From NCBI GenBank assembly GCA_001642005.1, contig LWCA01000092.1, positions 1 to 56,049 on the forward strand: 56,049 bases of DNA. The letters are read 5' to 3'. The first letter of the stretch is position 1, and each line of letters begins with the position of its first letter. The translations under genes and the position numbers were made by a program. The DNA comes from Intoshia linei (lineage: Eukaryota > Animalia > Orthonectida). Positions 2,161 to 56,049 of this stretch are shown one piece after another. The notes under the pieces were generated by a model. That model did not search any database and was not told the DNA's origin. It worked only from the letters and a program-made list of their open reading frames with translations.

Positions 2161-2270
2161 CCTGCATTTATTAATACACTAATAATATACAAATACATAA
2201 TCACAATATACAATAAATCAAATAACTTATGTTGACAAAGTAAACTTTTTTAACCATCAATCAGATATAC

Positions 2271-3239: not shown

Positions 3240-3310
3240 CAATAATGCAATGGTGAAATACAATAATGGAATAGTGAAATTCAATAATGCAATAGTGAAA
3301 TACAATTATG
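3240..3310 (+). repeat. 21-bp tandem repeat, about 3.4 copies (caataatgcaatagtgaaata)
   Basis: Units start at 3240, 3261, 3282 and a partial unit at 3303, just upstream of a transposase fragment; probably a subterminal repeat. Confidence 0.85.
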
Positions 3311-3414
3311 TAACTAAGAAACTTTTTAAGTTTTAATTTACTAATTTATTGTTATTATCGTTTAAACATTGAGCTTGCCATTTTCTAATAAATTTTCAAA
3401 TATGATGATCAAAT

Positions 3415-3651
3415 ATGAATTCAAGAAAAAATAACAAAAGTACTGTAGAAATTAGAAGATGTATTATTGAAACCCATAATGATGGTGGGGACTGGAAAAG
3501 GGTATGCGAATTGATGGGTATCAAAACCAGAACGGCATATTCATGGATAGAGAAACAAATGTACCATTTAAGGGATACAGGTGGAGCAACTCATACAAAA
3601 AAATCACCTGAAATCGTTTCTTTGTTATGGGTTGTAGATCAAATATTATAA
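3415..3651 (+). pseudogene. Tc1/IS630-like transposase N-terminal HTH fragment
   Basis: IRRCIIETHNDGGDWKRVCELMGIKTRTAYSWI...TGG resembles the N-terminal HTH of IS630/Tc1 transposases; truncated before the DDE domain. Confidence 0.55.
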
Positions 3652-4273
3652 CAGTGAGGTATTTAAATTCTAAGTTTTTTAAACATAAAAACTGTATTAG
3701 ATTTTAAAATTACAAATGGCAACCTCAAAAAAGTACATTTTCACTATCAAAAATCCATAAATTTTTAGATAGATTTGTACATGTATTAGCTTTTTTTAAA
3801 AATGAAAATGTAGTTCTAGAATTTTGAATAAAATTACAGCTCATATAGTTATCTCCAGTTAACACACAAAAATTTAATCTGACAAAGTGACGCCTTCATA
3901 GTCAAAAGAGTAATTTGGTTTTTTTTATTTTGTAACTATTTTAACAAAAAATTTGAAATAATTAATGGTCCTAGAGTATAAAAAAATTTAGTTTGATACA
4001 ACTTATATAAATACAAAAGTTCAATCTCAGAAATCTACGATGCTTTACATTTGACGTTTAAATTTTTATTTACAATAATTAGATTTTTGAAAAGTAGTCT
4101 GTAATAGTTTTCTTTTCTTGGTTCATCAGTTCTGTACTAATTACATCTTCAAGATCAAAACATTTTTAAAGCATCGTCTGTACAAAAATTATTAATTCCA
4201 TTTTTAAGTTCATTCAATTTTATAAAAATACTAAAAAATTATATAATAAATACTTTATCAAATATAAATAATA

Positions 4274-33800: not shown

Positions 33801-36800
33801 GTAACTTTATCATATTGAATAGTTGTTTTATCTGGTCCATCTATTTTAATTTCAAATTCAATTCCGGAATATTTTTCATTTAGATATAAATCGAAGACAA
33901 CGGGCTGATTTTTCAAACCGCAAATCACTCCTGGTCCAATTAAAGTGCATTCATCTGCATCATGTTCATCAACGACGAATGTTATGGGATCTTCAAAAAC
34001 TGTTTTGTTTTTGGCAACATATTGAATTTCATAATTTCCAATTTCAGTTGGTATGAATTCTAATTGATATGCATCGTTCACTGCTTCGTCTTCGTTTACT
34101 TGGACAACCTTAATATTACTGGGTATTTCTTCTTTAAACGTTTTTTTAGATTTGTGTTTTGATTTTTTATCTGATTTAGGTTTAGATTTTTTATCTGATT
34201 TAGGTTTTGATTTTTTATCAGATTTTGATTTAGCTTTTTTTGACTTTTTAGATTTTTTAGAACAGGAATCAGAACTAAAACTTGAGCTAGAACTTGAACT
34301 GGATGATGATTTATCCTTACTTTTTTTATCGGCATAATGGAAAACTTTAATATCTGTATTTTGAATGTCTTCACAATAAGGTAAAAGTACTTTTATTTTT
34401 TTTGCGTTAACTACGTCTACTGTTTTAATGTTGTATATGGGGTTTCCAATCGGCATGTTGTCTATCGATGCACACAAAACCAAACTGTGGTATTTACTTT
34501 CAGGAGAAAATGTGCATTTATAAATTACTGTATCTAATCTTTTTTCAGATATTTCTTGAGGTTCGTCTTGTTTGACGCAGACACATTCAATTTCAGTTCC
34601 TTTAATATCATAAAATATCGCTTTCACTGTTCCTTTATTATAATTTTTCAATTCAATTTCAAAATTGTTTGGTTCACATACTGCAGCGAATTTGGTGTCA
34701 ATTATTTGTCCAATTATAGCTGACTAAAAATTCAAAATAAAAAATTATCTTAAGCTTTATAATAAAACTCTAGTAAAGCAATTATCAATGCAGGATCGCA
34801 GGAATTATTAGAAAATTTTACTATTCAATTTGTATAAATAAAAAAATAAATGTAGTGATAATATTTTGGAACGTCATTTAATGTCGTAATAATGATTATG
34901 ACGTACTAAATGATTATCACGTAATTATGACGGGGTAAACAGATAATTCTTTTAGATTTGAAAATCTCAGTAAAATATACATTTTACAGTATTTAAAACA
35001 ACCCTACATCTTATAATTTTCGCCTTTAATCGAAGAATTTATAAATCAATATAAAACTTTTGAGGAGCAGTAAAATAAAACTTTCTAGTTGTTTTTATGA
35101 ATACATTATTTTGGTATGAATTTTTTCAATTATTTCTACATTTGTAAAACAAAACTATTAATGGATCTTTTTTATTTAAAACGTAACGTAAAATATTACA
35201 TTTTTGACTGTTTCTACAACTTGCATAGCTTTTTCAGTATCATGAACTTCAGAAACAATATTTAATTTCATAATTTCTTTCTTGAGTATCAAATCTGTTA
35301 TAGTAACATCATATTTTCCGATTTCGGGGGTAGTGTACCATACTTCTGCAAATTCTCCACCTTCTACCTCTTTAATTTTGTATTTGACATCCTTTGGACC
35401 GTTAAATTTGAAATCTAAATTAATAGATCAAATATTTATAAATATTTGGAATATTATTAAGTGTAAATTGTTAATATATGTTAGTATATTACAAGGGTTC
35501 TTAACGGTGGTCGATTTTTCTCAATTTTTATATTTTATTTCACAAAATGCATAATCTAATAAAAATTTTTTAAGGTCAAAAATTATTCTTCGTCATTTGA
35601 TTAAAATGTTAACGTCTTTTTCTTAAATTTCATAGCTAAAATAACATACAAAAGTATCACTTTTTTAAGATAATTATTGGTTATATGGGTCGATTCTTAA
35701 AAAATTGAGTATCAGTAACAACTTGTTACTAACATGTAATTGAAAACACTCACTATAGTAAATTTTATCAATTTAAAAAAATGTGATTTTTATTTTGAAT
35801 TATGGAAGGGAATTATGGTCTTAGATGCGTTTTAAAATTGAGAAGCCCTGGTATATCATAATAATAGGTATACGTCACCTTGTCAATAATTATTTTGTAG
35901 TGATAAAATTCAGAATATTACAGTTATATAGTGTATTACATGTAGTTTACTAATCGAAAAGGGATTATTGTAAAAAAATAAATTTTGGAGATTTTGTTAT
36001 ATTCAACATCTCTATCCCTGTCCAAATTTAATTTTTTTGATTATTTGCAAAAGTTAATAATTGCAGAAACATTTCAAAATAATTTCAAAACATCTCACTA
36101 CACCAACTCTGGTCACACTGTGATAATTATCACAGTAAATATTAATTAATCACATATTATAATAGACAAAATTCGATACTTATCCATTTATGATTTTTAT
36201 AAATGGTTTTGAGATGTCATTAAAAATTTTATTTTAATTAATTAGGTTGTTAAAGACAAACCTGTTTTTTAAAGTTTTAAAAAAATTCCCCCAATCATAA
36301 CATAACGCATCAGTACATTAATCAAAATAACCTAAAGAGTCACTATCTTTGCATGCGACAATGAAATAGTTTTCAACATTGGCTTCACTGAATGCAACTC
36401 CAGGACCATATGCAGCAATGTCTGTTACTAAAATCTTTTCAAACGCTTTTCCAATAGGAACACCACCAATATCCAAACATAAGGTATAATTATCAGCTTT
36501 GACGGGTTTGAAAGACAATGCCGTCAATTTTTTTCCATCTTTCACAATTTTTTCAACTTTTGATTCACATTCAACGCCTTCAGAATCTGTAACATTAAGG
36601 TATAATGGAGCTTCTCCTGATTTGGACGTATCGACACAAAGTGTATTATAGTCATTCAATTTTGCAATATGGTTCTCTAAGACAGGTGATTTTACAATAA
36701 CCTAATATAGTCTATTAATATTATAAAAAAATTTATATATAATTATAGTTGTATGAAATTAAAATTTAACGAGCTAACTAAAATTCCCTCTCAGAGCCGA

Positions 36801-39800
36801 ACCTGTCATGTTACACCTGTAACCAAAAAAATTTAATCAATTATGCCCCAATTTTTGCAAATGATACAGAATGATATATGACCCATAGCATCATACCCAA
36901 AATTCTGGAATCGATCTTTTAAATTTGACGCACAAAACTGCAACAATGTTGAAAAATGAGACGGCCATCTTACAAAAATTTCGTCAAATCTAAGCTCCAT
37001 TATAATAGAGCTTATTAATAATTATTATTGTAAACAACAATAACATATTAAATAGTACAACAGAAAAAATATAATAACGTATCAATTTTATGTGATGAGA
37101 ATTAGGGAATGACATCTGATTAATCGAAAACCCGGTTAATCGCTTACAATAAATAATCGTAATATATTTCGAATAATCGGATTTTCAAAAATTTCATAAA
37201 TAATCATAAATTTTTCAGGATTTACAAAATAAAACCATGTTCAGTCTCACTCTTGATGAATATACTGAAATTAATAATCGAAATTACATGAATATAAATA
37301 TTTATACATATAATATTCATAATATTCTTAAAATATATAATACAAGTTTGATCAGAATTTCTGGATCGGCCAAATCAGAGAAATGTGTACAAATTGTTAA
37401 GGAACAAATGTTAGAATGTGAACTTGACATAAATAAAGACATCGTTTGTGCCACAACTGATGGAGCCAGTGTAATGATGAAATTATGAAGGAAATTGTTT
37501 ACATCAAACTTTTTTTTCCCATGCGATACACTTAGCTGTGTGTGATGTCTTATATTCAATAACCGCAATCAATCAATCAATATTTTCTAATTCTAATAGT
37601 GAATATTCATGTAATGATACATCTGAAGAAAATAGTGAAAAAAATATCATACATTCCAAAAATTGTGAGATTATTTCGCAAATCATATGTAAAAAATTAC
37701 TGTCTACAAAGCCAAGTTATTTGACACATAAAAAAGAAGTGAAATTAATTTTTGATGTAAAAACAAGATGGAATTCTCTTTTGATTATGATTGAATTTTA
37801 TTTTAAAAATTTTTAAATTCCGATTAATCCGATAATCGTTGTTCAAATAACCGGAATTATTCGATAACCGGTTTTTCAAATTTTCGAATAATCAGGACTC
37901 TATAATGAGAACTATCAATTCTAATTCTAATTTTTTTTATATGTCGTTAATAATTTAAAATGATCATTGTTTACATTTCTCTAACTTCTTGAACAGTGGG
38001 AATAATTCATTAATTTATATTACTTAAAATTTAGAATATTCTTAAATCCAGCCATTTTTACTAAAAATCAAAATGTACCAACCTTAAGGAAAAATTCACT
38101 TCTACCAATCATTAAAGGAAAAAACCACTTTTACAAACATTTAAAAGAAAATTCCCGTTTTACCATAAATTTTGCATCAAACAATCTAATTCAATACACA
38201 AAACGAAAAAAAGAGCGTGCTTTAGAATCGCATATCACGTTGGTAAGAGTGTATTTTTCCATTAAGGGTGATAAATTTTGATTTTTAGTAAAAATGGTTG
38301 GATTTAAGTAGACGCCCCTTAAAATGTAATAAATTTGAAAAAAACTTCTATGTCATTACTTCAGGTTATCATTTCTAAAAATATTTCGGTTATGTGTGTC
38401 CCATCCCATTACCGAAGATAACAATTGCAATTGAATTATTAATGTACCTTATTTGCGTCAAATTTGATATCATCCGGTTTGGCATACACAACATAAGGAC
38501 TACTCGATATATTTTCATCTTTGATGGTAACGTAAATAATGTAAATTCCGGATACCGAAGGAGTATACGTAACTTGTTGAACATCGTCCAATATTGAAAC
38601 TAGTTTGTGCTCACATGTAATATCTGACACAATTTTTATTTCTAAAAGTCAAAATATTAATTATTATTCATAAAGTATCAAAAGTGACTCAAAAAAACTA
38701 AAATTTATTAACTCTTAATAATATATATGTTAAAATTTTGTAATGAAATTATGCTTATACTATGATAATATAAAAAAAATACCGACATCTTCTTTATTTT
38801 TGTTAGTATCAATTTGGAAGCATGTCGGATATCCAGCAATAGCTCGTTTAATACCTGGACCATAACATTTAACATCTGAATATTTTTCTTCATCAACAAT
38901 AATTTCAAAAGGAGAAGAAGTTATATTAACATCTTCATATTTAATTTCCAAATAGTGTTTTCCAGGTTGTTCAGATGAATAAGTAAAGTAATGATCACAT
39001 CGAATTTTATCAACAAATTCAGGGTTGTTTGCTATATATTCAGAGTCGACGATAATTGGATCAATTTTTACAAATGATTTGTCGGGTTTGATTAAATTAG
39101 CAGTCATTTTTCCTTTTCCAGCATTTTTTGATTTAACAAAAACTTGAGCTTCCTCTTTAGTATTCAAACCTTCATTTAAAACACCTTTCCCAAACGCTTC
39201 GCATGCAGCAATATTAATAACGTTTTCTTTTGATTTCAAACTTACAACTGTAAAGAAGGGTGACCCATATACTTCATTATCATTATAATAAATGTAGATA
39301 TAATAGTTTCCAGCCAATTTTGGTACAAATTCGATAGTAAATTTCTGACTCTCAGAGTCATACTTCATAGTATTTTCTATAACATCATTAGATCCAGATT
39401 TTTTAACATTAATTTGCAATTCTTTCTTTTCTCCTTCGATTTTTGCGTATAATATGGAAGGTTCTCCTACACGTGCATTTATTAAACCTGGGCCATAAAT
39501 ACGTACCGTATCAGGACTAGAAGGAGCAGCACACAACAAAAATGGACTTTCTGCTATAGGAATGTCAGTATCTTTGTCATCAATGTGTACTAGATGGTAT
39601 CCAGGTTTAGTCGGTTTGTAAAGTAATTTTAGGAATCCATTGTCTTCGATTAATAATTGATCCTTGTCTTGTCGTCCATCAGGCAAATCTATACAAACTG
39701 AATAATTATCTGCAGATTTTGTTGCATTAATAGGTATTTCAAAAACTTCAAATTTATCGACAACTTCTATTACAAGAGGTTCAGTACATTCTTTAAAGTC

Positions 39801-42800
39801 TTTTAAAGTTACATCACCCTTAACAGCTTTCTTTACATCATCAACGTCAGTTTTGACTGCATTATTCATTAATATTGCCAAATTCAATCCATTTATATTA
39901 GCGTATACTTTCACTTCACCGGGTTTTCCTGGTTTTATTTTGAATTTGTACTCACCGTCATCATTTTCCAATTTAGCTTCGAGTAATTTACCGTCTTCGT
40001 CAACTGCATAGATATCCAAAACCGTTTTTTTTTCAGGATCAGCTTTTCTAGTGTCAATTTCAATGGTTTCAGCGTTATTCGTATTAATACTGTCTGGAAC
40101 ATTACTCACAATAATTTTAGATGGATCAAATGAATCGAGTAAATTTATTACTGGACAAAGGAATGGAGAATCTTTGATATTTTTTCCGTCTTCCAAAACA
40201 TTAATTTGATATAATCCCTCCATATTTGGTGTATAATCGAGAGATAATTTATTTTCGTCTATGAATTTTTCTTCAACTTGAACCAAATTTCCTTTAGGAT
40301 CACGAATATCAAAAGTTAAATCGTCTAAAACGGATTTCGATTTTGCGGTAACGTCAATTTTAGCTGGGAAATTTTTCAAACAGAGTGTAACACCGTTTCC
40401 AACACACGTTGCATTTTCAGGAGCTATGTCGTCGACTTTTACAATATAAGGACTGCTTGCAACATCTTTATTGTCATAAAGTATACTAACTTCATAATCA
40501 CCAGGTTCTTCATAGCAAGGCTCGATTTTGTAATAATTTGTGGCGTCTTTTTTATCGATGCCCAATTTCTTCATTACTTTTTCAATTAAATTTGGTTTAT
40601 CCTTTATTTTTTCAATTTCTGCGTGTTCAATGTTATCTGAATTTGGTCTCTTAACTTTACATACTAAATCAGCGTCACCGGAATCTGTCACGTTAACATA
40701 AATTGCTTTGTCGTCATCGTTTGTATTTAGTCCTTCATTGAATATTCCCCGACCAAAGACTTTAACTTTTGCAGGATCAAATGCTGATTTTTCTATTACT
40801 TCAATTTCCTTCTTTTTTAGTTTAGTTCTTCCATGTTTAACACATGCATTCAATTTACCAACCTTTTCTGGAGTATACTCAATATTATGTTCCATTTTTT
40901 CTGGGTTGTAGTCATTTAGTACCTAAATCGCACATAAAGCACAATTAATATTAAAAAATTTTTAAATGAATAAAATGTAACAGGCATTAATCGTAAAATA
41001 GAATTAATTAAATTATACAGATTGACATATAGGCACGGGTATTAGAAAATGTTATTTATATTCATATTTAAAGATCCCAATAATTTTTTTTAAAATTGCC
41101 AAAATTATCCATTAAAAAAAATTGGAGTTCAACCAATATTTTTATAGATTCTAGACTTATATTAAAGTGTAATATTATAAAAAAATTTAGTTTATAGACA
41201 TCATTGCATAATGATCTTCTAAAAAGTTTTAAATGTGTGAGTTATTAATTCATATTAGATATGTTCGTTTCTATTACATGCATTAATAATATAAATTATA
41301 TTATTAATTAATTTACCTTTAGTTTTTTTCCTTCATCGTTTTTAAGAATAACATTCAAATGACGTGGGTCATAGTCCTTCAGTTCAGAATCAATTTTTAT
41401 TAAAAAATTTGTTGGTTGATCTACTGTAACGGGTTTCTCACTTTCTCCTATACCAGCACCTTCAAATTGAACATATTTCGGATCGATTATTTTTGAAATT
41501 GGTGCGTCGTCTGAAACTTTTGCTGATGGGAATTGAACCAAATAAGTCAATAAACTCAGTTTATCAACATTTGGTTGCATCATATCTTCTGGTGTCATAA
41601 GCTAAAAATTTTAAAACATTTAAAAATAAATAAAACAACTCAAATAATTTAAATAGATATTAATTCATCAAATTATATATCCTGAAATAAAATATATCGG
41701 GTGTTCGTAAAGTTTGAAACGTAGCAGCCCATTTTATTAACATGAATTTCACCGGTCCCTTTTTAATCGCGTTCTTTTATTTTTGTAAAACTAGGTAATA
41801 TGTCAATATAAAGCGATACATGTATGTATAAAAACATTTTGCATTATTTTATTTGGTTGTCCCACTCGTAAATACAGAACTATATCATAAAATTATAATT
41901 TCATACCTTAAAGGACTTTTTTTGGTTTATATCAGTAATAATTTACATTACCGACATTGATGTTCTTAATATTACTTACATGTATACATTAGAACCGAAA
42001 TATTCATGAATTATATATAATACTGTTTTCCAAGAACACTATTTCAAAATTCATTAATTAATTAAAAACTTTGATAAATTTTTTGGTAGCATTCTATTAT
42101 TACGTATATAAGATAATATACGTGCATTATTATATACGCCCATAATTTTTAAAGTGATTGGGTAGTTTGATTGGATAGTGGTTGGAGATTGGTGGATTGA
42201 TTAATATAGTGTATCTAAAAACTATACAAAACCAGCTCATATTTAATCAGCTAGTCGTCTATTAAAAAAATTATTTCAATAAAAATCGTGTTGGCTTCTA
42301 ACAACTTTTGTAGTCCATAATTTTAGATTTCATTTGTATAACACAATTATTTTCATTCAATTAGAAGAGTCTTAAATCATATTAGAATCAAAATTTACCT
42401 TTGAAACATTCAAGTATTGGTCTGCCAAATCCATAGCTTTGGTTGTTCTTTCAACTGGACTTTCGTCTGTTTCAATGTGATCATCATATAATCCTAAAAA
42501 AATATATATTAAATTTATATAAAACAAGGAAAATAAACAGTATTTGTAATCTTGACATCAGTATAAAAAGTGACGACATAAGTATATTTGGGAAGACTTT
42601 CTTTCAATTTAGCTTTTAATGATAATTTATTAAATTAATAATGTGGCTCTTTAAAATGGATTTTTAGTTTCTACGTAAAAATTAAAAAAATTAACTTAAA
42701 AAAATAGTAAATATAGTTAAACCAATGTTTTCCAAATTTTTTGTGTGCTAGGCTCCACTTTAACTCTTAAAAAATACGAGGCACAACGGAATTACAAAAA

Positions 42801-44961
42801 TTACCTAACAGTCTTTTTTTGAGCTGATATAATAATTAAATTAAAAAAAAATTATTATTAATTCAGTGACAATTTTTTACTACAAAAAAAAACTATAATT
42901 TTCTACTAAATTACAAATCGAAAGTATTCACATTGTCGAAAGTGTAGCGAATTATAATATTTATTTTATAGAATTAATGATATCACTGAGCCTGACTATT
43001 CTTACAGATTTTCTTAATATCAGGTATGACACATGGGAATCTTTTACGTATGTAAAATTTAAGGTCAGTGGTTACATTACGTTTACTAATTAAAATTAAA
43101 AAAACACCAAATTCTATTACGGTTATTACAAATTTCAGTCTCAGAAATTGAATCCTTCAGAATCAAAAAAACAAATTATTTTTTTTAATATATAATAAAA
43201 TCAGTTTTATAATTTTAAACAACATAAATTCTGGAACTCGTTTTAATATCATTACCATTTTCGTAAATCTCAACCTCAGAAATGTACCTCTTCATGGCCA
43301 CACCACCAAATTACCCGTTTTTTGAAAAATGGGAAAAATTAAAGCATTTTATAATACATAAATTCTGGATATTTTTTTACATCATGAGCATTATCATAAA
43401 CCACAACCTCAAAAACTAGAAATCTGTTAAAATGCGATCCTCAGCAGAGTTTGATAGACTATATGAACCTGTTAAATTAAAATTATCAAAAATTTCATTT
43501 CAATGGTATACTCCACTGATGAAAACCAAATCAAATGTGGTGTGTTAATTTTCAGATTATATTGACTGTATATTTGAAAATTATTTTTTGGTGAGTTTTT
43601 AAATAAAAAAATTATTTTGCATCCTTACCGATTCTACATAATACTAAAGTTAAACATATTTGTTTTTTCTTAACCATTTTCGGAAACATTTCATACAACC
43701 CAATTTTTAACATATTAATTCTTAATAACCTTTAATAACCGGCGCACCGGTATGAAAATGCTGTTCTACATCATTAGTGTATGTGTAATAAAAGTTAGAG
43801 CCGAACATACTAAGCCCCAGGCCAGCGGAAAATGAAAAATAGGGCCCTAAAAAATTCACAAACGATGTGTAGTTTCATAACCTCCAAGGGTTTTGTTTCG
43901 ACATTTTAAGTTTAACACACAAAATAATTATCATATTTAAGAATAAAATTTTTAAATGCTCAATTTGGAAAAATGATAACCCCATTTTACAAAAATTACG
44001 TCAATCCCTCTGATGAGGTCTCGTGTACTGTAGGTTCGGTTCTGGGTAATATTTATTAATTATAATAACAATGCAGTGCATTACAATAAAAAATATTCAG
44101 AGTGGTAAAAAATTAAGTCAATTATAAATTATACCCAAAAACTTTAAAAATGAGTAAAAAAATATATATAATATGTTATATTTGTTAACAAATATATACG
44201 TCAATTGGGAATAAAAATTAACCTGGAGCACATGCATCAACAATAGAAGCTAATCTATGTCCATCATCCCACCCTGCACAAATATTGCCAATTTTGTCAT
44301 CGGGTAACATATCTTTAACCCATTTAATGAGTTTATCTTCACTGGTCATTTTAGTTTTATTAAGATCATCTTCACTATCGTCGTCATAATCGAGTGATTT
44401 TATTTGAAAATTTAAAATCAAGGTCCACACGAATGCCAATAATAATTTTTTGTCCTTATTCATTAAGGCTTGACTATCTAAAAAAATTTTTTATTTATTT
44501 ATTAATTATTGAATAATTGTATTGCTATTGATTTAATGTTAAAATTATTAATGTTTAAATTATTGAAATAAATTACCGATACTTGGAAAAACAACGCCAT
44601 CCTTTTGGAAATTATCTAGAGCAATAGAAATGTTATCCAATTTTTGATTAACCATTTTTGATTTTTTATTATACTTTGTTATCTTTTTACTCGACAAAAT
44701 CTCATACAGATGAATTACAGTCATGTCGTTAAAATCGTCATCCATATTATCAAACTTGACATTTGATTTATTCAGTAAATTTTTTATCCAGGCCGTAAAA
44801 GTTCTTCTTTGTACATTTTTCCAATCAGATATTGGAGCTTCTAAAAATAAAGGTAAATAAAAAAAGGAATGTAAAAATGTAGTAAAATTAAAAAATCAAA
44901 AAATTAAAAGACTAAGTAAATGTTAAAGCTTACTAACGCTTTTTAATCTAGCTTTACTCAT
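30844..44961 (-). CDS. Filamin-like protein, full length (CH1-CH2 actin-binding domain, Ig-FLN repeats, C-terminal dimerisation repeat), about 2,340 aa
   Basis: Approximate exons 44961-44934, 44840-44577, 44477-44223, 42493-42399, 41601-41318, 40923-38782, 38641-38447, 36701-36332, 35414-35200, 34724-31747, 31082-30938, 30890-30844. DWKNVQRRTFTAW, LAFVWTLILNFQI, NVDKLSLLTYLVQFP, many GPG / GSPF repeats, C-terminus WGDDHIVGSPFYIHAV. Confidence 0.93.
34161..34232 (-). repeat. Coding 24-bp tandem repeat, 3 copies (KSDKKSKP), inside a Ser/Lys-rich filamin insert
   Basis: gattttttatctgatttaggtttw units at 34161, 34185 and 34209. Confidence 0.9.
35492..35850. mobile_element. hAT-Charlie-like MITE in filamin intron
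   Basis: caagggttcttaa ... ttgagaagccctg; flanks gtatatta / gtatatca. Confidence 0.75.
37102..37902 (+). mobile_element. Internally deleted hAT transposon with transposase remnant, antisense in a filamin intron
   Basis: ORF fragments FSLTLDEYT, TTDGASVMMK and DVKTRWNSLLIMIE are hAT catalytic motifs; taaccg/taatcg subterminal repeats at both ends; flanks tgatgagaa / taatgagaa. Confidence 0.88.
38030..38325. mobile_element. Long-TIR (about 60 bp) foldback-like element with ~29-bp internal repeats
   Basis: cttaaatccagccatttttactaaaaatcaaaatgtaccaaccttaaggaaaaattcac (38041-38099) is nearly the reverse complement of 38250-38308; the right end is ...cccc|ttaa; a related end lies at about 380-465. 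Confidence 0.75.
43796..44044. mobile_element. MITE (CAGAGCCGAACCT family)
   Basis: tagagccgaacatac ... gtaggttcggttctg (12/15); related ends near 12110, 18766 and 36792. Confidence 0.7.
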
Positions 44962-45121
44962 ATCAAAAAATGTGGTTAATAAATGAAAATAAGATATTTA
45001 AATGATGGCACAATATGTCAATATTAGTATATCTGTATTAAATATATCCCAGTAATGTTTATATTGCGTAAAATATGATGTAAGACAAAGATAATTTCTT
45101 AAAAAATGTAATTAATCATTA

Positions 45122-48100
45122 TTAATTGTATATACCTGGAGCTAATATTAATGTTTCAAACGGAGTTTTATGTATTTTTTGGTTATCAACCCACAAAGAA
45201 ATGAAATATTTTCCTTCTTTTTCAGGTAGGAAAGTGCACATTAATTGAGTACTATTTATTCGAATTAAATCAACTGAAGGTTGAGATGGACCAAATATTT
45301 TTAATTGTAGTTTTTTGGTAGCATACTCTTTATTTATGATTATATAAAATGTGGTAGGTTTAGTCGCAATTCCACACATTAATTCGTTACCATAAATAAT
45401 ACAACCATCATTAATGTCACATTCGGGTATCATAAAGGTGAGTTTATTTGGAAACATTAACTTTTCTCCGCAATGGTATACAAATTGATAAATTCCACTT
45501 TTTTTTGTCAAAAATTCAATCATGTACGCATCATATTTATAATTCATAATGACTTCAGTAATTTTGATTGGTACGACTTCGTTAGCCGTTAAAACATTTT
45601 TAGTAATATCCAATAGATCCGATACATTATATTCGTGAACAACACGATTATTTCTTTTAATTTCAATTACATTTTCTGTTACAGGGTGGATATTTGTTTC
45701 TTTAGACAATTGTGTGTCTTCATGAGTTGGCTCACAAGTAGATTCGAAATTATCGGAAATGTGTAATAAGCAAATAGTAGTTTCCTCAATTGGTTCCAAA
45801 TATGGTAATAATATTTTATGAGTTTGTGTTTTAATAATATCATCAGTATAAACAATATATGGTTCTTTAATTGCAATGTCATCAACCAAAATGCAAATTG
45901 ATAATTTTTCGTTTCGCATTAAAGGTGTAAACGTAAAAGTGTAAACAAATTTAGTTTCAATATTTTCACCTTTTCTAATCATTTTTTTAGTGGAGCATGC
46001 AACCAATTTACCATCAAAGGCATAAATTTGAGCGACAACGTCTTTAGCTTCATAATTTGTCAAATGTAATTCAAAAACATTTGGTATATATACAGCGCTC
46101 ATACACGTATCGATACATTTTCCGACAACCTTGCTCTAGATTTATAATTACGTTTTATATCAATTAATTAAAAAATATTAAATTTACCTTTAAAAGATTA
46201 TCCATTTTATCAATCAATTTTGGATTATGGCTTGCTTCAATAGTTGCAGATTTTACAATTTTATTGTTTACTGTCACAGTAAAGGGGTATTTTCCAAGTT
46301 TATCAATTTTATAGACTACACAACAAATATCTTTATATGGGCTTAATTTTACTTTAACTGGAATTGATTCATTTTCAAAGTTTACTTTGACGTCAGCGGA
46401 ATTGTAGCATGACACACAAAAGTAAGTATCAACATTTAATTGGCAATGTTTCAATCCTGGACCAAAAATGTTTATGTTATCGAGTACGTTTAATGTTATG
46501 TAGGGTTCACCGATTGGGTATCCTCCAATATCGAGCATAGCTGTGTGTAAACCAGGTTTATTTGGAACGAAGCTGAAAGTTTTTAATGAATCACATTTTG
46601 GATCAACAGACATGTTAACTTCACAAGGTAGGCCCAATGAATCTACAACTGTCAAATATAATGGCGCTTCTTTACTTTTTGATAAATCTACTTTCACCAT
46701 ATTTTCATCGTTCAATTTTGCGAATCCATTTTCAAATGGCAATGACTCAACAGTAATCTAAAATAATATTAACATTCAATTTTTTGAATAAAATAAATTA
46801 GGGATAGCAAAGGTTTTTTTATTTAGATGTTAGTTAATTATCATGGAATAAACATGTATATATCAAGCACATAACGACAATATTACACATGATCAGAAGG
46901 AGGGGTTTTAAAATGTTTTGGTTCAATTTATGTTACATTTAATTCAATTTAATATAATATTGATTACATCCTTACTTATATAATATGGTATGAAATATTT
47001 GTGTGAGTGTCCAGCTTTATTTAAATAACTACCCGTCTTAGAATTTTATAAAGTCCACACTTCAGTTAAATTTTTTTTCCGGGGGTGTTCGCAAACTTAA
47101 TTTCAACCTTCCAAACTCACATCTTATGGGTCAAAAACCTCAATTGTCCTTTTTTTGAAAATCAAACAAGTTGGAGAATTTAAAAAAATATATACGCTGA
47201 TACGGATCTTAAAATCATAAATAATATCATAAATTTAAATTTATGATAAATAAAAACCAATAAACCAAAATACCCTTTTTTTAATGAAAACAACCCTAGA
47301 CTTTAAAAAAATTTACAGGTTGTACAGTTGTATCCTGTTAACACACACAAAAAATTTCAATCTGAATAAGTGACGACTTCACGATCAAAAAAGCATTTTA
47401 GTATTAATATATTATTTTGTTCCGAAATATTTTATTAAAACAAAAACTGTGAAATATTTAACGGTCTGAAAATTAAAAAAAAATAATTGTAATTGTGATA
47501 GAGCTTATGCCAGTTGATATAAATACAAAATATAAATCCCAAAAATTTACGCATTCCAAATAAAAAATAATTTTTAATATATTATCAACAAAATTTTTAC
47601 CATACTTTGAGTAAAATAAAAATTAAAAATGTAAATATATCGTAATGTAATTGGTATATCTTAGATCAGTGATTTTCGATTCAAATAATGCAGGGACCCC
47701 ATTTAAAAATATTTATTTTTTTATACCCCAAAGGAAACATGAAATATCAAAAAAATACTGGAAAAAGAAAATTTTTTATTTTGTGGTTTCATTAAGTGGA
47801 TTTTTCCCTGAGGGTTTAAAATTTAATTTTTTATTAAATTTTATTAATGGATAGACAAAAGTGACATTTTTTAAATAATAATGTAATGATCGTCTAGGCT
47901 TTGAAATAAATTCCCAACATTTGGTAACTGTAATAAATATTAAAAATTCTCCTATAAAAATAAACAAAACTTGATCAAATTTTTTTCATATTTTATTTGA
48001 ATTTCACGCATCTCCAGGCACATAGTTTTGGACCCCGATCGGAAACCACTGTCTTAAATCATTATGGATGAAAAATTTGAAAAAAAAATAATTTATCAAA

Positions 48101-51100
48101 AATTTGATATCCTATTAACTAGGGGTGTCAGACTCAATTTGCATATGGGTAAGATATGAAAAAAAATTATTACGGGGTTCGCACAAAAAAATAACTTCAT
48201 TAATAAAATTATTAAACTAACAGTTTTAATTAATTAATAAAATAAAATAAGAAAGACTAGCTCAATTTTTTTTGATGCTTTGAATACAATTTAAATAATA
48301 TAAATACCCAGAATTCAAAAAATTAAATTGTTAATAAAATCAAAAAAAATGAACTAGAAACAAATTTAAAAACATAAACAGTATAACTGAACATGGAGAA
48401 CAATATTATAAAGTCGGTACCATGTTTAACAACTCAAAAGCCAATTTCCGTTAAAATAAAGTTTAGTTTTAATTTATCCATAATAGCGATTAATTTTAAT
48501 TTTAAAGCGATATTTAAAATGGCAAACGTAGCTCGAATAGATAGCGTTAAATGCTTTTTGATTGCAAATTAGTTTTTCTATTTTAAAAATACACCTTTTT
48601 AGTGCTAAATGCCCATTGAATGCTAAAATTGTAATTATGAATAAATAAATCATGAAAAATATATAATAAATCTGTAAAAAATTTTATAACGTTGTCTAAT
48701 TGACACCCCTTCTCTTAACTTACAAATAACTCAATCTTGCTAAAGCAACTTATATAATTAATTAAATTAAGATTCAGCGAACATTTTGTGGTGAAATAGG
48801 AGTCAGTCGAGTTTAAATTTTAAGTCTATCTATAAGTATGAGTCTTGCATATCTTGTCCTGTAGGTCACTTAAATTGAAATAATTATATTTCATTTTCTA
48901 AAGAATGGTTTATTATATTATTTTTTATAAATTTGTATTATATCAATAATGCGTAAACTTTTCAGTGATTTTATAATATAGTGACACAAACTTTCATAAT
49001 TTCTGTTTAATGTGATTATTTTTATAAGAAAAGAAATGATTTCGTAATAAAGGGTCCAAAAAATTATTTTTTTAATTATAATATTATATGGATAAGTCGT
49101 CAAATTTTTTTTAATGCGAATTTGGGTCGCCTAGTTAAACAGGTTAGAAAGCGCTTGTGTAGAGAGTAAATCTAAAAATCGGCAGATAATTCAAATCACC
49201 TTGCTCTAAATATTAAACCAACTTACCTTATCAAGATGGAATTTGACATTATCGGGTTTAGCATATAATACATATGGACTCATTGCAACATGAATACCAT
49301 CAATTTTTATCGATATAGTATAAATTCCTGAAGTTGGTGGTGTATAATTAATTTCAATGACATCTGACAAAATATTTTTGACAGTATACTTGCAAGGCAA
49401 ATCGGAATCAATGGTTATATCTACAAAAAATTATATAATGAATAAACTTAAGACATTACCAAATTCTTTGCTAGTCATATTTTGATTTGAATCTATTCTG
49501 AAACAAGTCGTGTAGCCTGCTATGGCACGCTGAATACCTGGTCCATAACAGGTAATTGAAGTATATTTTGGATGAGTTACGTTAATTTCATAAGGAGATC
49601 CGTTAAATGCTAGGCTTCCACATTTAAGTTCCAAATAATATTTTCCTTCTTTATCAGGGGTATATTCAAAAAAGTAATCACAACGTATTTTGTCTTTAAA
49701 AGATAGGTTTAATTCAACAAATTCTTCTGTAACTTTAATTGGAATTATTTCGTCGATTGTTTCGTCTGGATTAATTAATTTCACTGAAATTTCTGAATTT
49801 TTAGAATTTTTGTTTTTTATAAACACTGGCACAGTTTCTCCAGTTTCCATTCCATTCTTAAGTATTCCTTTTCCATAAGCTTCACAAGCATTTATATTAA
49901 CGAGACCGCCATCCGTATCAACTGCAAAATTGCAGAAAAATGGAGACCCATAAACTTCGGTTTCATCATAGTAAACATAAATGTAATGATTGCCACTTTC
50001 TACAGGATAATAATCGGCCACAAATCGTTGGTAATCTTCATTATAACAAACGTTAATGTCACATTGGGAATCATGTAATGAATTTTTAATTTGTACTTTA
50101 AGTTCTCCAACGTTTTCAGATTCTTTATCCAGTTTAGCATAAATTATCTTTTTTTCTTTAGTTTTTCCATCAAGTAACCCAGACCCATAAAGTTGAACAG
50201 TATTAGGTTCATAAGGTTGTATATATAGACAGAAAGGGCTTTCCGAAATTTCATCGTTTGTATCTAAATCTTTTATGCGAACCTCGTGGTTTCCAGCTTG
50301 AGTGGGCTTATAAAGCAACTTTAAAACTTTATCGTCTAATACTAGCACAGGAGAATCTGTAGATCCATCTGGACAATCAACGGAAACTGAAAAACATTCT
50401 GGCGCTTTTGTTTCCATAATAGGAACTTCACAAATTGTAAATTCTTCGTCTATATTAAACCGCAATCCAGCTTCGAAATCTAATAAATCTTTTACAGTGA
50501 CATCCTGTCCTTCAATTGTATTTTTATCTTCTGTCAGCACTTTTTTAGTAGTTAATAATGCAATATTGATTCCTGAAACATCAGCATATAATGTAGCTTG
50601 GCCAGCCATTTTAGGTTTTAAACTGTAAATGTACAAACCATCTTCAATTTCTTCTAATAAACAATCGATAAATGTATTGTCAGAGTTTATTGTGTACATA
50701 TTTAAAATACATTCATTGTAAGGATCTGCTGCTCTCAAGTCCACTTCAATTTCTGTTACACCGTTTACTGTGACACGATCTGGTAATTTTGTCATTTTTA
50801 TTTTAGTTGGGTCAAATTCTGGATTTATATCCACGACTGTGCACAAGAATGGTGAATTTTTAACTTCTTCATCGTCCTTCATAATGTGAATTTTGTGTTC
50901 TCCGAGGACATTTGGAACATATTCCAATTGCATAGTTTTATCGTCAATTAATTTTTCAGTAACTTCAATTTTTTCTCCGGTAGGATCAATTACTTTGTAA
51001 GACATACTTTCAAATTTCTCATTGTCTTTCAATTTAATTTCAAATTTAGCTGGCATTCTGGCTGGAGATGATTCTAAACCACCACCAAAACAATCAATTT

Positions 51101-54100
51101 CTATCACTTTTTCAGTGCCAATGTTTACAGTGTATGGGCTTTTTGGTATATGTGTCGTACCACTCAACACCGTAACAGTATATTCACCCGTTTCTTTATA
51201 TTTTGGTTGGATTACAAATATATCGTTTAATACGGATCTTTTCAATCCCAAATACGACAAACAGTGCTTAATCAGATTAAACGAGTGTCTTAATTTGATT
51301 GCTTCATATACTGTTTCTTTATTACCATTTACAACTTTACATGTCAAATTTACATTTCCACCTTTAGATGAATCTACATAAATGTTACAGTCTGTGTCGT
51401 TTATACTTAACCCATCTTTTAATATACCACGTCCGAATATTTTAATCAGATTTGGATTGAAATCTAAATATCAATTAGAATATTGAAAATGTACTATATA
51501 TTACAGGATGATGAAGCATCAACGTCAACAACATATGGAGTTGGAGTTAATATAACCTTTCCATGGTTTATGTCAATTTTTATTATTCCAGATTGTTCCG
51601 GTGTATAAGTTAAAGTATGAATTTTCTTTTCGGGATCATATGCACCTGTAACCTAATTTAAAAAAATTATAAAAATATAATAAAATAATCTAAGCTAACA
51701 ATTTAACAATTAATAAATATTAATCTAATAATGTAATAAATCTATATTAATTTTAATATAAATAGGGTTGTCAAATATACTTGGCGTCAAGAAAAAAAAT
51801 TAATTCAAATGTTAAAACAAATCATGGCACACAAACTAGGATTTTTGGGCTAAGAATAAATTTTTTTATTTTTACAACATAAATTAAAACGTTCACCATA
51901 GTTACTTTAACGTTCATATTAAGTAAAAAATAGGATTAAAAATTATAATTTGTATATAGGCCTATAATATTACTGTTATATGTATTTTAATTTCTTGTGA
52001 ATTTTATAACAGTGTCAATTTTTTTTATTTTACAATTATTAAAATCAATATACCACAATGATATCATTTTTCATATTTTTGATGGATACGTTCAGTAATG
52101 TATCATCATAATTTTTTTCTTGTGGTGCAATTTTAACATAAAATGTTGTTTCCATTCCCATCCATATTTTATCTTCATTAGCATATTTTTGAATGCCCAC
52201 TCCTGCGCCATAAATGGTTACATTTTCAGGGTTTATCATTTTGTAAATTGGAGCATCATCTGCTAACACGGCAAATTTGAATTGCACCAAATATGTCATT
52301 AAGCTAAGTTTATCTACATTGGGTTGGACTAAATCTTCAGGTTGCATGAGCTAGATTTTATTAAATTTTTTTATTTTCAAGCAACCTTTTTAACAGCCAA
52401 ATATTTATCAGCCAAATCCATGGCTGTAACAGTTATTTCTAACGGAGTATTTTTACTTTTGTCATAATCGAGATATAATCCTAAATATATTTATTTTTAA
52501 ATACGAAACCACGAGGCGCACATTATGAATAAAAACTAAGAAAGTAGTAATAAATTAGATTTGACTTAGACCAGTGGTTCCCGATTCAGATAGTGTACGG
52601 TCCACCATTTCAAAATATTAAGTTTTTTGGACCCCAAAAGAAACATGAAATATAAAACATTTATGAAAACATGGTTTTTTAAAGTTTTTTTTTCAAAAGA
52701 TTTAATATAATAGGATTTTTTATTTTGGGTTTTGGATGAGTAAGTTATTGCTTATAAGATTTGGTAAAATTGGATTTTGAAAAAAAATATTGGAAAAAAA
52801 GAATATTTCCCTTAAGCATTGGTAAAATTGGATTTTTATTTTGGAGTTGGAATAATAAGTTTTTTTTAAAAGATTTGATAAAATTGGAAAAATGGAATTT
52901 TTCACCTGAAGGGTTTAAAATTGTGTTTTTTTAATGGTGAGATAAAAGTGGAATAAAATTGGGGTTTTTGAAATAATCATGTAGCGGTCGTCTAGGCTTT
53001 GGGATAAATTCCCAACATCTGGCAAATCTGTAATAAATATTAAAAATTATCCTATATAAATTAATAAAAGTTTTGTAAAATGGTGGCCTAATTTTTTCAA
53101 ATTGAGCATTCAAAAAATAATATTTATTTTGTGTGTTAAATTTAAAATGTCAAGTTTATGTCATATCACCAAATATTTAAGATAATATATATTTTTATAT
53201 TTTATTTAAATCTCACGGACCTCAGGAATATAGTTTTGAAACCTCATGGGTCCAGGGACCCTAATCGGGAACCAATGATTTAGACTATCTTTGTCTTTGA
53301 CTAGCATTCTGTATGGCCTAATTTCTTCAAGTATCTTTATTTATAAAGTAATATTTAAAGGTGGACAGTTCAAATAACTTGGGGTCGTTCACTAATGACC
53401 ACAGGGCACAAAAAATGTTAAGTTCAATTGCATTTCATTACAATTCATAATAATTTAAATGAAAATATCCGCGAAGATTAGATAATATTCTAAAGGTGCC
53501 GCCTGAGTCATATTTTGTAGGATATATGTCTAGCATTTTCCTTATGGACATTTCTAATTACTCAAATAAGAAAGCAAAAAAATAACCTGGTGCGGTATTG
53601 TTAACCATTTTAGCTATTCTATGTCCATCTTCCCATCCTAGAATTAAATAAATATAGTATAAACACCAAAACATTTACCTTTTGAAATATCAGGAATTTT
53701 TTCATTTAAAACAGATCCAATCCAATTGATAAGTTTTTGTTGTGATGTCATTTTTTCGGAAGATTTTTTTTTTTTTTCTATGTTGTCATCAACGTCGTCA
53801 AATTCTAATTGTTGAATTTGATAATGTAAAATTAATTTCCAGATAAACCCTAATACCAATTTTTTGTCAACCTCCAAAAGTGCTTTACTATCTATTTAAA
53901 CATATTAATAAAAAAAGATGTATGATAATGTATTCATATATTCAAATACCTATAGATTCAAAAGTAACCCCATCCTTGTTGAAATGTTTCAGAGCAATGG
54001 AAATGTTATCAAGTTTTTGATTAACCATTCGAGATCGTTTATTATACCTTGTAATCTTTTTTTTAGACAAAGCCTCATATAATTTAATCACAATCATGTC

Positions 54101-54394
54101 ATTAAAGTCTGTTGATAAGTCATTCAACTGATATCCACTATCAATTAAACAGTTTCGTATCCATGCTGTAAATGTTCTCCTTTGCACACTTACCCAATCA
54201 TTTGAATTATCTAATAGATTTAATTAATAATAGCTAATTAATCAACCAATTACTAAACTAATTTTATCAATAAAATTCACTTTTTCAAAATTCGCAACAG
54301 ATAATTAAAAACAATAAAAATATAAAAACCATTTCTTCTAAATTACCTGTGACATATGTTTAACTTTTAGCGCTTTTTTAATTTTATATTCCAT
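45122..54394 (-). CDS. Filamin-like paralog 2, C-terminally truncated (about 1,620 aa) or 5' half of a fused filamin gene
   Basis: Approximate exons 54210-53950, 53891-53679, 53637-53587, 52480-52386, 52350-52053, 51652-51505, 51463-49459, 49421-49227, 46757-46188, 46136-45122. Collinear with the downstream filamin (QRRTFTAW, MVNQKLDNISIAL, QPNVDKLSL, DKIRCD, YGPGI.RAIAGY). The first exon (ATG 54394) is not in phase as assembled. Confidence 0.88.
46972..47600 (+). repeat. Dispersed TIR-less repeat family copy (Helitron/DINE-like, tentative)
   Basis: Collinear with 22429-23060, for example gtcttagaa...ataaag.ccaca, tatacgctgatacggat and aataagtgacga.ttcacg. Confidence 0.75.
47667..48051. mobile_element. 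hAT-Charlie-like MITE (CAGTGGTTCCCGAT family), shorter copy
   Basis: cagtgattttcgat ... atcggaaaccactg; flanks tcttagat / tcttaaat; collinear with 52572-53277. Confidence 0.85.
48120..48711. mobile_element. hAT-Charlie-like MITE
   Basis: taggggtgtca ... tgacacccctt; flanks ctattaac / ctcttaac. Confidence 0.8.
52572..53277. mobile_element. hAT-Charlie-like MITE (CAGTGGTTCCCGAT family), longer copy
   Basis: TIR cagtggttcccgatt / aatcgggaaccaatg (14/15); flanks acttagac / atttagac. Confidence 0.9.
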
Positions 54395-54804
54395 ATCAAT
54401 CAAAAAATATTAAATAGTGTATATTCATTCAAGTATTGACTTTGGCGCAATTTTATTAGATAAAGTCAGACAGGTAATATTTATTTGTTATATTATTTCA
54501 AACCAAAATATATTACTCTCTAAAAATAGTAAGGTCACAATATAATTTATTTCATTGTATTTTATTAATTATTATTTATAATCTACTTTCATCCCGATAA
54601 AATTTTAGTCATCAATCAAACATGTATAGATGCATGACTTGTAAATCATTAGGCAACATTATTATAAACCAATATGCAAGTTAATGATGTGGTTAGTGGA
54701 TTAAATTTAATGGTTGTTCAAATAACATTTAAATACACACCTTAATTTAACTAACGTATTGTACTTCTACAAGTCAATAAAATTTAAATAAGTTTATTGT
54801 TTAG

Positions 54805-56049
54805 TTACAATTTCCAAAAATAATAAAATTTTTGGAAATGAAATAAATAATATTTATACAGCAAACATTTATGACAACTGTATACTATTTGACGATTTGA
54901 ATGATTCCCACATATTCTTTTATTGCAACCACAGCAAATACGAGGTGTTGAATTTTTGCAATTTTGTGAGCAAATACCATATTTAGGAAAGTATGAATTT
55001 GTAAATGAAGGGATATCAAATTTAATTCTACAAGTTAGCATTGCATCAATTATATCCTTATGAAACCCACCTACTGGCAATGATCTGTGTTGCATGTGAT
55101 CCATAACTAATTCCATTCCAAAATTTTACATGAATTCATAACGTTTGTGTCGATGATGAACTTTATTAAATTTGTATAAAACAGGAATTAATGCAGGCGA
55201 TATTTATAGTGTTCATAAAATAAGAATATGGCCATCTTCTGGTTTTACGCTGCACAGAATAACTTTGACACAACTGATCTACTGTGTCTACCCCGCATTT
55301 TGATTTATTGTAATATAAAATAGACCTAGGCTTTTTGGAATCAGCATCTATACATCCTTTCACGTGTAAAGTTGACACTAACAATACTTGTTTATTTTTT
55401 TGGGAAGATATGATACAAGTGTTACAATATTTGAATAGAAAAATTTGATAGATGGGATAATTAAATGTTTTGTATTTGATATTTCAATTGGTAAATCACA
55501 TTTGTTTTTTCGATTTGTTCCAATGTATTGTAAATTATTTTCACATAAATACTTAATAGACTCAAAATTAGAAAAAAAATTATCACCAGTTACTGTCCTA
55601 CAAGAAAATAAAATAGTTTTAGTTATAATTGATACAATATATGGAGCAGTTAACTTTTCAGACGCTATCAATGATTTATCTAAATATGGTAAACCGTCAA
55701 ATGTATATTTTGATAACAATTAAAAACAATTTCATTCCGTAACGTGCTGCTTTCATTGGCATATACACACGAAATTTTACACAACCTCTAAATGGAATGA
55801 GTTGTTCGTCAATTACAACATTTTCACCAAATATAAATGATTTTCGACAATTTTCAATAAATACCTCCCGTATATTACGAAACGCAGCAAATTTATCATT
55901 TTTATTTCTTGTTTGTACATCAAATCTTAAATTTGTCGAAATGTCCCTAAATCTATTTAAAAACATCGTTGCTCTGAATACTCTGAATGTCTCTTCCAAG
56001 AAGCCCACATTTCCACATCATGGTAGCATTTTCCTTACTACTTTTGCAT
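54805..56049 (-). pseudogene. piggyBac transposase pseudogene (PGBD4-like), runs off the window end
   Basis: Four consecutive broken ORFs carry VIDEQLIPFRG...YMPMKAARYGMK, TGDNFFS...IGTNRKNK, YNKSKCGVDTVDQ...KTRRWP and a C-terminal Cys-rich domain; frameshifts and stops separate them. Confidence 0.93.

What the first reader, a model, noticed from the sequence alone, without database searches (positions are those of the whole stretch)
44841..45136. Tandem filamins can splice in frame into one giant filamin with two actin-binding domains
Seen: the upstream filamin ORF ends ...TPFETLILAP-G|gtatat exactly at the end of an Ig repeat, with a stop 4 codons later and only 160 bp before the next ATG. 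The GT at 45135-45134 is a phase-1 donor of a type used elsewhere in this window (gtatat, gtatac). Exon 2 of the downstream filamin has a phase-1 acceptor at 44842-44841. A 295-bp intron joins them in frame (ILAP-E-APISDWKNVQRRTF) and skips the 28-nt ATG exon. Known: canonical filamins have one N-terminal ABD and dimerise through the last Ig repeat. Inference: the locus could make a normal filamin, a monomeric truncated filamin, and a ~3,950-aa ABD-rod-ABD-rod-dimer chain that would be a tetravalent actin cross-linker. I know of no such architecture.
Basis: partly seen in the sequence, partly recalled or inferred. Interest (0 to 1): 0.85.

Follow-up and report, generated by a model that had tools for sequence, protein, structure and literature searches.

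The report
One giant two-headed filamin gene
The predicted splice is real, and it is the only form seen in transcript contigs, so the two "tandem filamins" of the parasite Intoshia linei are one internally duplicated gene for a roughly 4,000-residue filamin with a second actin-binding domain in mid-chain, already in GenBank as an undescribed "hypothetical protein".

Summary
The donor G|GTATAT (45136|45135), the acceptor AG (44842-44841), the 295-nt interval and the in-frame join ILAP-E-APISDWK are all in the sequence.

Spliced contigs of two public runs carry exactly this joint. One contig is 5,584 nt at depth 56, the other 2,024 nt at depth 8.7. Both continue through the neighbouring introns. 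Nothing in those runs covers the "stop plus 3' end" of the upstream unit or the 28-nt ATG mini-exon.

The window is a whole contig of Intoshia linei (an orthonectid). GenBank OAF70983.1 (3,997 aa, "hypothetical protein") already uses this junction.

Architecture:
- leader
- ABD1
- 13 Ig repeats
- ABD2
- 20 Ig repeats

The first 13 Ig repeats match the next 13 one for one in order and size. The two ABDs are 61% identical and the Ig pairs 24-51%.

So this is one gene with an old internal tandem duplication, not two genes that sometimes fuse.

No other ABD-rod-ABD-rod filamin appeared among 193 other fetched proteins, and no paper names Intoshia together with filamin. A dimer model of the last Ig repeat passed its controls. 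I rate it a new variant of a known kind, of moderate interest.

The parts
30847..55116 (-). Whole coding region of the single gene as annotated (OAF70983.1 / A3Q56_01266, 3,997 aa, 22 coding exons)
   Evidence: Exact mapping of P0001 onto the window. Pfam finds 4 CH and 17 Filamin stretches.
45136..55116 (-). First half: leader (residues 1-61), ABD1 (62-309), Ig repeats 1-13 (303-1665)
   Evidence: Self-built repeat profile, ABD matches and Pfam on exons.
45136..46135 (-). Last exon of the first half (Ig 11 to 13), ending ...TLILAP + G
   Evidence: X1 contig record 2 and X2 contigs 6 and 7 cover 45136-46135. Maps to P0001 residues 1337-1669.
46188..46759 (-). Preceding exon, joined to the next one by a 52-nt GT..AG intron (46136-46187)
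   Evidence: Joint 46135/46188 in X1 and X2. Intron ends shown.
44841..45135 (-). 295-nt GT..AG intron that joins the two halves (donor GTATAT, acceptor TTTTTAG). It is single-copy in the genome.
   Evidence: Joint 44840/45136 in X1 and X2 contigs. Sequence. Own-genome search finds only this copy.
45122..45124 (-). TAA that would end the first half if the donor were not used. It lies inside the intron.
   Evidence: Sequence. No contig covers 45058-45135 in X1, X2 or X3 (table 2 arithmetic).
44934..44961 (-). It is intronic in the only transcript form seen.
   Evidence: Sequence. Zero depth in X2 and X3. The X1 depth is explained by a 22-nt match to a C2733 transcript. No significant likeness to the region upstream of the first CH exon.
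44577..44840 (-). First exon of the second half: CH1 of ABD2 (APISDWKNVQRRTFTAWIKN...)
   Evidence: Contigs in X1 and X2. Pfam CH. PDB matches to alpha-actinin and filamin ABDs, E 3e-11 to 1e-8.
44222..44477 (-). Second ABD2 exon, after a 99-nt intron (44478-44576)
   Evidence: Contigs in X1, X2 and X3. Pfam CH.
42399..42492 (-). Third ABD2 exon, after a 1,729-nt intron
   Evidence: Joint 42492/44222 in X1, X2 and X3. P0001 mapping.
30847..44840 (-). Second half: ABD2 (residues 1667-1920), Ig repeats 14-33 (1912-3995), with a 37-residue linker before the last repeat
   Evidence: The dimer model of residues 3897-3997 passed its controls.

Best explanation
The stretch is an ordinary, apparently constitutive GT..AG intron inside one gene of Intoshia linei. 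An old tandem duplication copied a genomic segment holding the actin-binding-domain exons and the exons for Ig repeats 1-13 of a filamin paralogue. A donor at the end of the first copy's Ig13 is spliced to the acceptor of the second copy's first CH exon. The mRNA encodes one chain: leader, ABD1, 13 Ig, ABD2, 20 Ig. The stop four codons past the donor and the 28-nt ATG mini-ORF lie in the removed intron. Shown: the junction in transcript contigs, the continuous open frame, the domain order, and the one-for-one match of the two halves. Inferred: both ABDs bind F-actin, the chain pairs through its last Ig repeat as canonical filamins do, and the dimer therefore carries four actin-binding heads, with about 13 Ig repeats between the two heads of each chain.
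For: Transcript evidence:
- one 5,584-nt X1 contig (depth 56.4) runs 46759-46188 | 46135-45136 | 44840-44577 | 44477-44222 | 42492 onward. It extends 3,398 nt further upstream. A 2,024-nt X2 contig (depth 8.73) carries the same 44840/45136 joint.
- All four skipped intervals have GT..AG ends on the minus strand.
- Bin depths over 45058-45254 (X1 34.1, X2 5.27) equal 119/197 of the fused contig's depth, so nothing else lies on 45058-45135.
- X2 and X3 have depth 0 over 44861-45057.
- The share of sampled words held by X1 (0.49) is about the exonic fraction of the stretch searched. This fits RNA.

Annotation and architecture:
- the public protein OAF70983.1 (3,997 aa) holds the junction peptide.
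- 4 CH domains and 33 Ig repeats. ABDs lie at residues 62-309 and 1667-1920.
- Repeat sizes of the first 13 Ig (105, 114, 93, 89, 94, 96, 108, 91, 96, 88, 102, 93, 91) mirror the next 13 (101, 116, 93, 88, 95, 93, 108, 89, 94, 87, 106, 93, 91).
- ABD1 and ABD2 are 61% identical, against 24-51% for the Ig pairs.
- intron positions are largely shared by the two halves, so the duplication was genomic.

Dimerisation:
- the homodimer model of residues 3897-3997 scored 0.79, best control 0.57.
- That mark was reached by 21 of 30 proteins solved as pairs of one chain and by 0 of 23 solved as single chains. On eukaryotes the counts were 17 of 29 and 0 of 30.
- The runs agree in at least 94% of contacts, and the partner's pLDDT is at least 88.
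Against: The RNA evidence is contigs, not reads, and comes from three runs of one study whose library kind is not on record. Contigs drop rare variants and cannot show transcript starts, ends or relative levels, so minor separate transcripts are not excluded. The ATG mini-ORF keeps an intact phase-1 GTAAGC donor, which could be chance or a little-used internal first exon. No orthologue from another orthonectid was available, so conservation of the fused form is untested. Actin binding by either ABD is untested. The dimer pass may reflect the model's memory of solved filamin Ig24 dimers. The annotated 5' exon (55116-54942) is not confirmed.
Confidence: 0.8

Rival explanations
1. One reading: the locus makes three products. 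These are a canonical filamin from an internal promoter using the ATG mini-exon, a truncated monomeric filamin ending at the TAA at 45124-45122, and the fused giant, by alternative splicing, promoter use and polyadenylation.
For: The sequence allows it. There is an in-frame stop four codons after the donor, and an ATG followed by 28 nt and a GTAAGC donor in the right phase for the 44840 exon. Contigs cannot exclude rare forms (tool notes).
Against: No contig of X1, X2 or X3 lies on 45058-45135 or truly on the mini-exon. The fused contig passes the exon-2 acceptor without a break in two runs. The X1 depth near 44981 is a 22-nt match to a spliced C2733 transcript. The mini-ORF shows no significant likeness to the sequence upstream of the first CH exon: local score 27, against a shuffle mean of 29.8. 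The public annotation has only the fused model.
Confidence: 0.13
2. Two independent genes whose fused RNA is a minor read-through (conjoined-gene) by-product without a protein role.
For: Short distance and same strand. Read-through chimeras between tandem genes are known in animals (own knowledge).
Against: The fused junction is the only form assembled, at the same depth as the flanking exons in two runs. The donor sits exactly at an Ig boundary and keeps the frame. Both ABDs are well kept.
Confidence: 0.04
3. Artefact: a mis-assembled duplicate or chimeric contigs create the appearance of a fused gene.
For: The assembly is fragmented (3,520 contigs).
Against: The halves are only 24-61% identical at protein level, so they are not collapsed or duplicated haplotypes. 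The intron is single-copy. Runs dated 2024 reproduce the junction with zero mismatches around it.
Confidence: 0.03

Closest known systems
Canonical animal filamins (FLNA/B/C, Drosophila cheerio, C. elegans FLN-1)
   Same: An ABD of two CH domains followed by a rod of filamin-type Ig repeats and a terminal repeat that is modelled as a dimer. The best long database matches are filamins at 33-39% identity over the ABD2 region. CH1 matches solved filamin A/B and alpha-actinin ABDs. The definition 'N-terminal ABD followed by multiple IgFLN' comes from the abstract of PMC3143143.
   Different: This chain has two ABDs, the second one internal (residues 1667-1920) and directly after an Ig repeat, and 33 Ig repeats. 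Typical filamins have about 20-24 (own knowledge). It is about 1.5 times the length of the 2,200-2,700-aa filamins found. The same genome also has a separate locus with a CH exon upstream of filamin repeats on contig C1753.
Fimbrin / plastin
   Same: Two CH-type ABDs in a single polypeptide, so a monomer can bridge two filaments (abstract of bioRxiv 10.1101/2021.12.01.470822).
   Different: Plastin ABDs are adjacent and tightly packed and make tight bundles. Here the ABDs are separated by 13 Ig repeats (about 1,360 residues), and the chain also has a long rod and a likely dimerising end.
Conjoined (read-through) genes between tandem paralogues
   Same: The exons of two adjacent duplicate units are joined by splicing from a donor in the first to the second exon of the next, skipping its first exon.
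   Different: No evidence that the two units are transcribed on their own. The joined form is the only one seen and is the annotated gene.

Membership tests
Filamin family | Actin-binding domain made of two calponin-homology domains | tested here: met
   Pfam CH with 4 stretches, 157 bits. ABD-length matches at residues 62-309 and 1667-1920. PDB matches to filamin and alpha-actinin ABDs.
Filamin family | Rod of filamin/ABP280-type Ig repeats | tested here: met
   Pfam Filamin, 723 bits, 17 stretches. 33 repeats with a profile built from the protein itself.
Filamin family | Self-association through the C-terminal Ig repeat | tested here: inconclusive
   Dimer model of residues 3897-3997 scored 0.79, best control 0.57. 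The mark was reached by 21 of 30 solved pairs of one chain and 0 of 23 single chains (eukaryotes: 17 of 29 and 0 of 30). Contacts agree in at least 94% and pLDDT is at least 88. This is a model only and may come from memory of solved filamin dimers.
Filamin family | One ABD per chain, at the N-terminus | tested here: not met
   A second complete ABD lies at residues 1667-1920, after 13 Ig repeats. This is the respect in which it is a variant.
Filamin family | F-actin binding and cross-linking activity | not testable with these tools
   Needs co-sedimentation or imaging with recombinant fragments.
Conjoined / read-through gene pair | Each parent gene has its own transcript (own start and own poly(A) end) | tested here: not met
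   No contig lies on 45058-45135 or truly on 44934-44961 in three runs. Contigs can miss rare forms.
Conjoined / read-through gene pair | A transcript that joins exons of both units | tested here: met
   Joint 44840/45136 in X1 and X2 contigs.

The most novel reading that the evidence does not exclude
Both ABDs bind F-actin and the chain dimerises through its last Ig repeat. Intoshia linei then makes a natural four-headed filamin, in which each chain alone can bridge two filaments about 13 Ig repeats apart. That cross-linker geometry has not been described for any filamin. A rarely used internal start at the ATG mini-exon could add a canonical one-headed isoform from the same locus.
Probability: 0.4. 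Interest if true: 0.55.

Novelty: new variant of a known kind. Interest (0 to 1): 0.45.

Why it matters
Filamin function is usually explained by its geometry: one actin-binding head per chain, a flexible rod and tail-to-tail pairing, which gives a V-shaped two-headed cross-linker. A natural chain with a second complete head in mid-rod tests how much that geometry can change. It could serve as a template for engineered cross-linkers or for studies of how head spacing sets network against bundle formation.

It also corrects two readings of this contig. The "truncated filamin kept open" and the "tandem pair" are halves of one gene.

The value is limited in three ways. The organism is hard to work with, the gene model is already public, and nothing is yet known of the protein's behaviour.

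Tried and rejected
- **Spliced leader or B-only 5' end.** The X1 loose end at 44981 looked like a leader. It occurs once in the genome, on contig C2733. With a 41-nt GT..AG intron removed on the other strand of C2733, it abuts a 22-nt stretch that is 95% like window 44960-44981. It is therefore a chance short match of another gene's mRNA. I rejected it as evidence for the mini-exon.
- **Mini-exon as a conserved relic of an ancestral first exon.** By eye it resembled a stretch upstream of the first CH exon. The local alignment score was 27, and 243 of 300 shuffles scored as high or higher. Rejected.
- **Same architecture elsewhere.** In the 150 best CH1 matches among 1.84 billion representatives, the only other match lying far from the N-terminus is P0002, a 453-aa Elysia protein with CH domains and no filamin repeat. 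Among 38 long filamin or plectin matches none has rod then ABD then rod. P0188 (4,170 aa) has CH matches only at its start, and P0194 (5,224 aa) gave none in that scan. This is a limited sample, not proof of uniqueness.
- **Logan contig L002 (P0003).** It holds an ordinary N-terminal ABD gene with unrelated genes upstream, so it is uninformative.
- **Rfam on 44800-48200.** No match.
- **Literature.** No paper holds both "Intoshia" and "filamin". Searches for two or internal ABDs in filamins returned only plastin and general filamin papers.
- **Protein Atlas on an Ig exon.** It returned only generic animal filamin clusters.
- **Steps not run.** I made no search with a sequence joined by myself across the splice. 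Exons were searched by reference, and the joined form was examined only through the public protein P0001. No structure prediction of the Ig13-ABD2 linker was possible, because no reference exists for that segment alone.
Full report
**What is in the sequence.** On the minus strand the open frame of the upstream filamin-like unit ends ...KTPFETLILAP and then G|GTATAT. The G is at 45136 and the GT at 45135-45134. Read through, the frame gives G-I-Y-N and a TAA at 45124-45122. An ATG at 44961, 160 nt further on, opens 28 nt followed by GTAAGC. The next acceptor...TTATTTTTAG, ends at 44841, and the exon from 44840 reads AA GCT CCA ATA TCT GAT TGG. Joining G to AA gives ILAP-E-APISDWKNVQRRTF across a 295-nt interval. 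Pfam confirms CH domains and filamin repeats in the open segments on both sides.

Laid on 42300-48200, their contigs are spliced, so they behave as RNA.
- One X1 contig of 5,584 nt (depth 56.4) covers 46759-46188, 46135-45136, 44840-44577 and 44477-44222, then jumps to 42492.
- One X2 contig of 2,024 nt (depth 8.73) covers 45612-45136, 44840-44577 and 44477-44222, then runs on beyond 44222.
- The joint 44840/45136 is listed as "skips 295, CT..AC", which is GT..AG on the minus strand.
- The other three skipped intervals in the same contigs also have GT..AG ends.
- X1 holds 0.49 of the sampled words of 38763-48762. That is about the exonic share of that stretch by the exon map.

**Are the separate forms seen?** They are not.
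- The bin 45058-45254 has depth 34.1 in X1 and 5.27 in X2. These figures are exactly 119/197 of 56.4 and 8.73, the part of the bin covered by the fused contig (45136-45254). Nothing lies on 45058-45135, where the stop and the 3' end of a stand-alone upstream gene would be.
- The bin 44861-45057, which holds the ATG mini-ORF, has depth 0 in X2 and X3.
- X1 shows depth there together with a loose end at 44981. That loose sequence occurs once in the genome, on contig C2733.
- Removing a 41-nt GT..AG intron on the other strand of C2733 brings it next to a 22-nt stretch 95% like window 44960-44981. The signal is a chance short match of another mRNA.
- The 295-nt interval itself is single-copy in the genome.
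- Contigs can drop rare variants, so rare alternative forms remain possible. The fused form is the only one assembled, and it passes the exon-2 acceptor without a break in two runs.

**Identity and prior annotation.**
- A search with the first ABD2 exon against 1.84 billion representative proteins gave one strong hit. It is a 3,997-aa protein with two matched stretches, the better at residues 1671-1757.
- That protein is OAF70983.1 / A0A177BBH7, "hypothetical protein A3Q56_01266" of Intoshia linei, on a 56,049-base contig, which is this window. The assembly has 41.6 Mb in 3,520 contigs.
- The protein contains ILAPEAPISDWK starting at residue 1666 and maps exactly onto 22 coding exons from 55116 to 30847.
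- The fused model is therefore already public, though unnamed. No paper in the library holds both "Intoshia" and "filamin".

**Architecture.** A profile built iteratively from the protein's own repeats finds 33 Ig repeats. ABD-length matches lie at residues 62-309 and 1667-1920. The order is:
- leader, residues 1-61
- ABD1
- 13 Ig repeats, ending at residue 1665
- ABD2
- 20 Ig repeats, with a 37-residue linker before the last

The sizes of the first 13 repeats mirror those of the next 13 one for one. This includes an unmatched insert after repeat 11 in both halves. Most intron positions are shared. The unit that was duplicated is therefore a genomic segment holding the ABD plus Ig1-13.

The copies are old. 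The Ig pairs are 24-51% identical, and the last exon of the first half is 34% identical to its counterpart. The two ABDs are 61% identical overall and 67% in the first CH exon, against 36% to the CH exon of another locus. That pattern fits continued constraint on both heads, although ABDs also evolve more slowly in general.

Contig C1753 carries a CH exon upstream of many filamin repeats, apparently a separate canonical filamin. Further repeat loci lie on C544 and C2444. The gene in this window is thus a lineage-specific paralogue, not the animal's only filamin.

**How it most likely works.**
- Shown: one pre-mRNA, one open frame and two complete CH-CH domains. Their first CH resembles solved alpha-actinin and filamin ABDs, with E-values from 3e-11 to 1e-8.
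- Modelled: two copies of residues 3897-3997 form a symmetric dimer. The score was 0.79 and the best control 0.57.
- That mark was reached by 21 of 30 proteins solved as pairs of one chain and by 0 of 23 solved as single chains. On eukaryotes the counts were 17 of 29 and 0 of 30.
- The runs agree in at least 94% of contacts and pLDDT is at least 88. The tool warns that such a pass may come from memory of solved filamin dimers.
- Inferred: each chain can bind two filaments through heads about 13 Ig repeats apart, and a dimer would carry four heads. I did not test actin binding or the effect of an Ig repeat directly before CH1 of ABD2.

**Comparison with what is known.** It meets the filamin criteria of a CH-CH ABD and a filamin-type Ig rod. 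It fails "one N-terminal ABD per chain", which is what makes it a variant. Fimbrin/plastin also has two ABDs per chain, but they are adjacent. It looks like a conjoined gene pair, but independent parent transcripts were not seen. Among 193 other fetched proteins (the best CH1 matches and the long filamin or plectin matches), none has rod-ABD-rod.

**Limits.** The RNA evidence is contig-level, from one study and with unrecorded library type. No orthonectid relatives were reachable. The annotated first exon (55116-54942) is unconfirmed. The X1 contig reaches 3,398 nt upstream of 46759, which corresponds to about CDS nucleotide 39 of the annotated model. That is compatible with the annotated exon but does not prove it. 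Exons were searched by reference, and the joined form only through the public protein.

**Verdict.** The three-product picture and the tandem-gene picture are not supported. I rate it a new variant of a known kind, already present unremarked in the public annotation, and of moderate interest.

Noticed in passing
window 55169-56017 (-) and 54808-55125 (-): Decayed piggyBac-type transposase in three shifted frames (Pfam DDE_Tnp_1_7, profile positions 69-348). The annotated first coding exon of the filamin gene (55116-54942) lies in the Cys-rich open frame just 3' of it. If its donor is read through, the frame gives C-SQN-C-KNSTPRI-CC-G-C. Exon 1 may be exonised transposon sequence or a gene-prediction artefact.
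   Followed up: partly
window 46831-47618 and 47816-48012 (inside the 2.4-kb intron 46760-49226): Contig depth rises to several thousand in all three runs, from many contigs mostly 90-95% alike with many variant positions. This points to a dispersed repeat family that is abundant in RNA. There is no Rfam match.
   Followed up: partly
G000:C1753:13216-25178 (-), G000:C544:6218-9937 (-), G000:C2444:6692-6931 (+): Further filamin-repeat loci in the same genome. C1753 has a CH exon upstream of many repeats and looks like a canonical filamin. Its CH1 is only 36% identical to those in the window.
   Followed up: partly
L001 (G000:C2733:12799-15828), about 1531-1571: A 41-nt GT..AG intron on the minus strand, inferred from the spliced X1 contig. 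The gene appears highly expressed, with depth of some hundreds by the bin arithmetic.
   Followed up: no
window 45676, 45685, 45894, 45960, 46521: Single-base differences from the assembly, each seen in two or three of the runs. The 2024 material is a different strain or population from the reference individual or individuals.
   Followed up: no
P0001 residues 3043-3099 (window about 34420-34250, -): The insert after Ig11 of the second half carries a serine run (SSSSSSSSSFSS) that is absent from the matching insert of the first half. It may be a flexible or phosphorylated linker.
   Followed up: no
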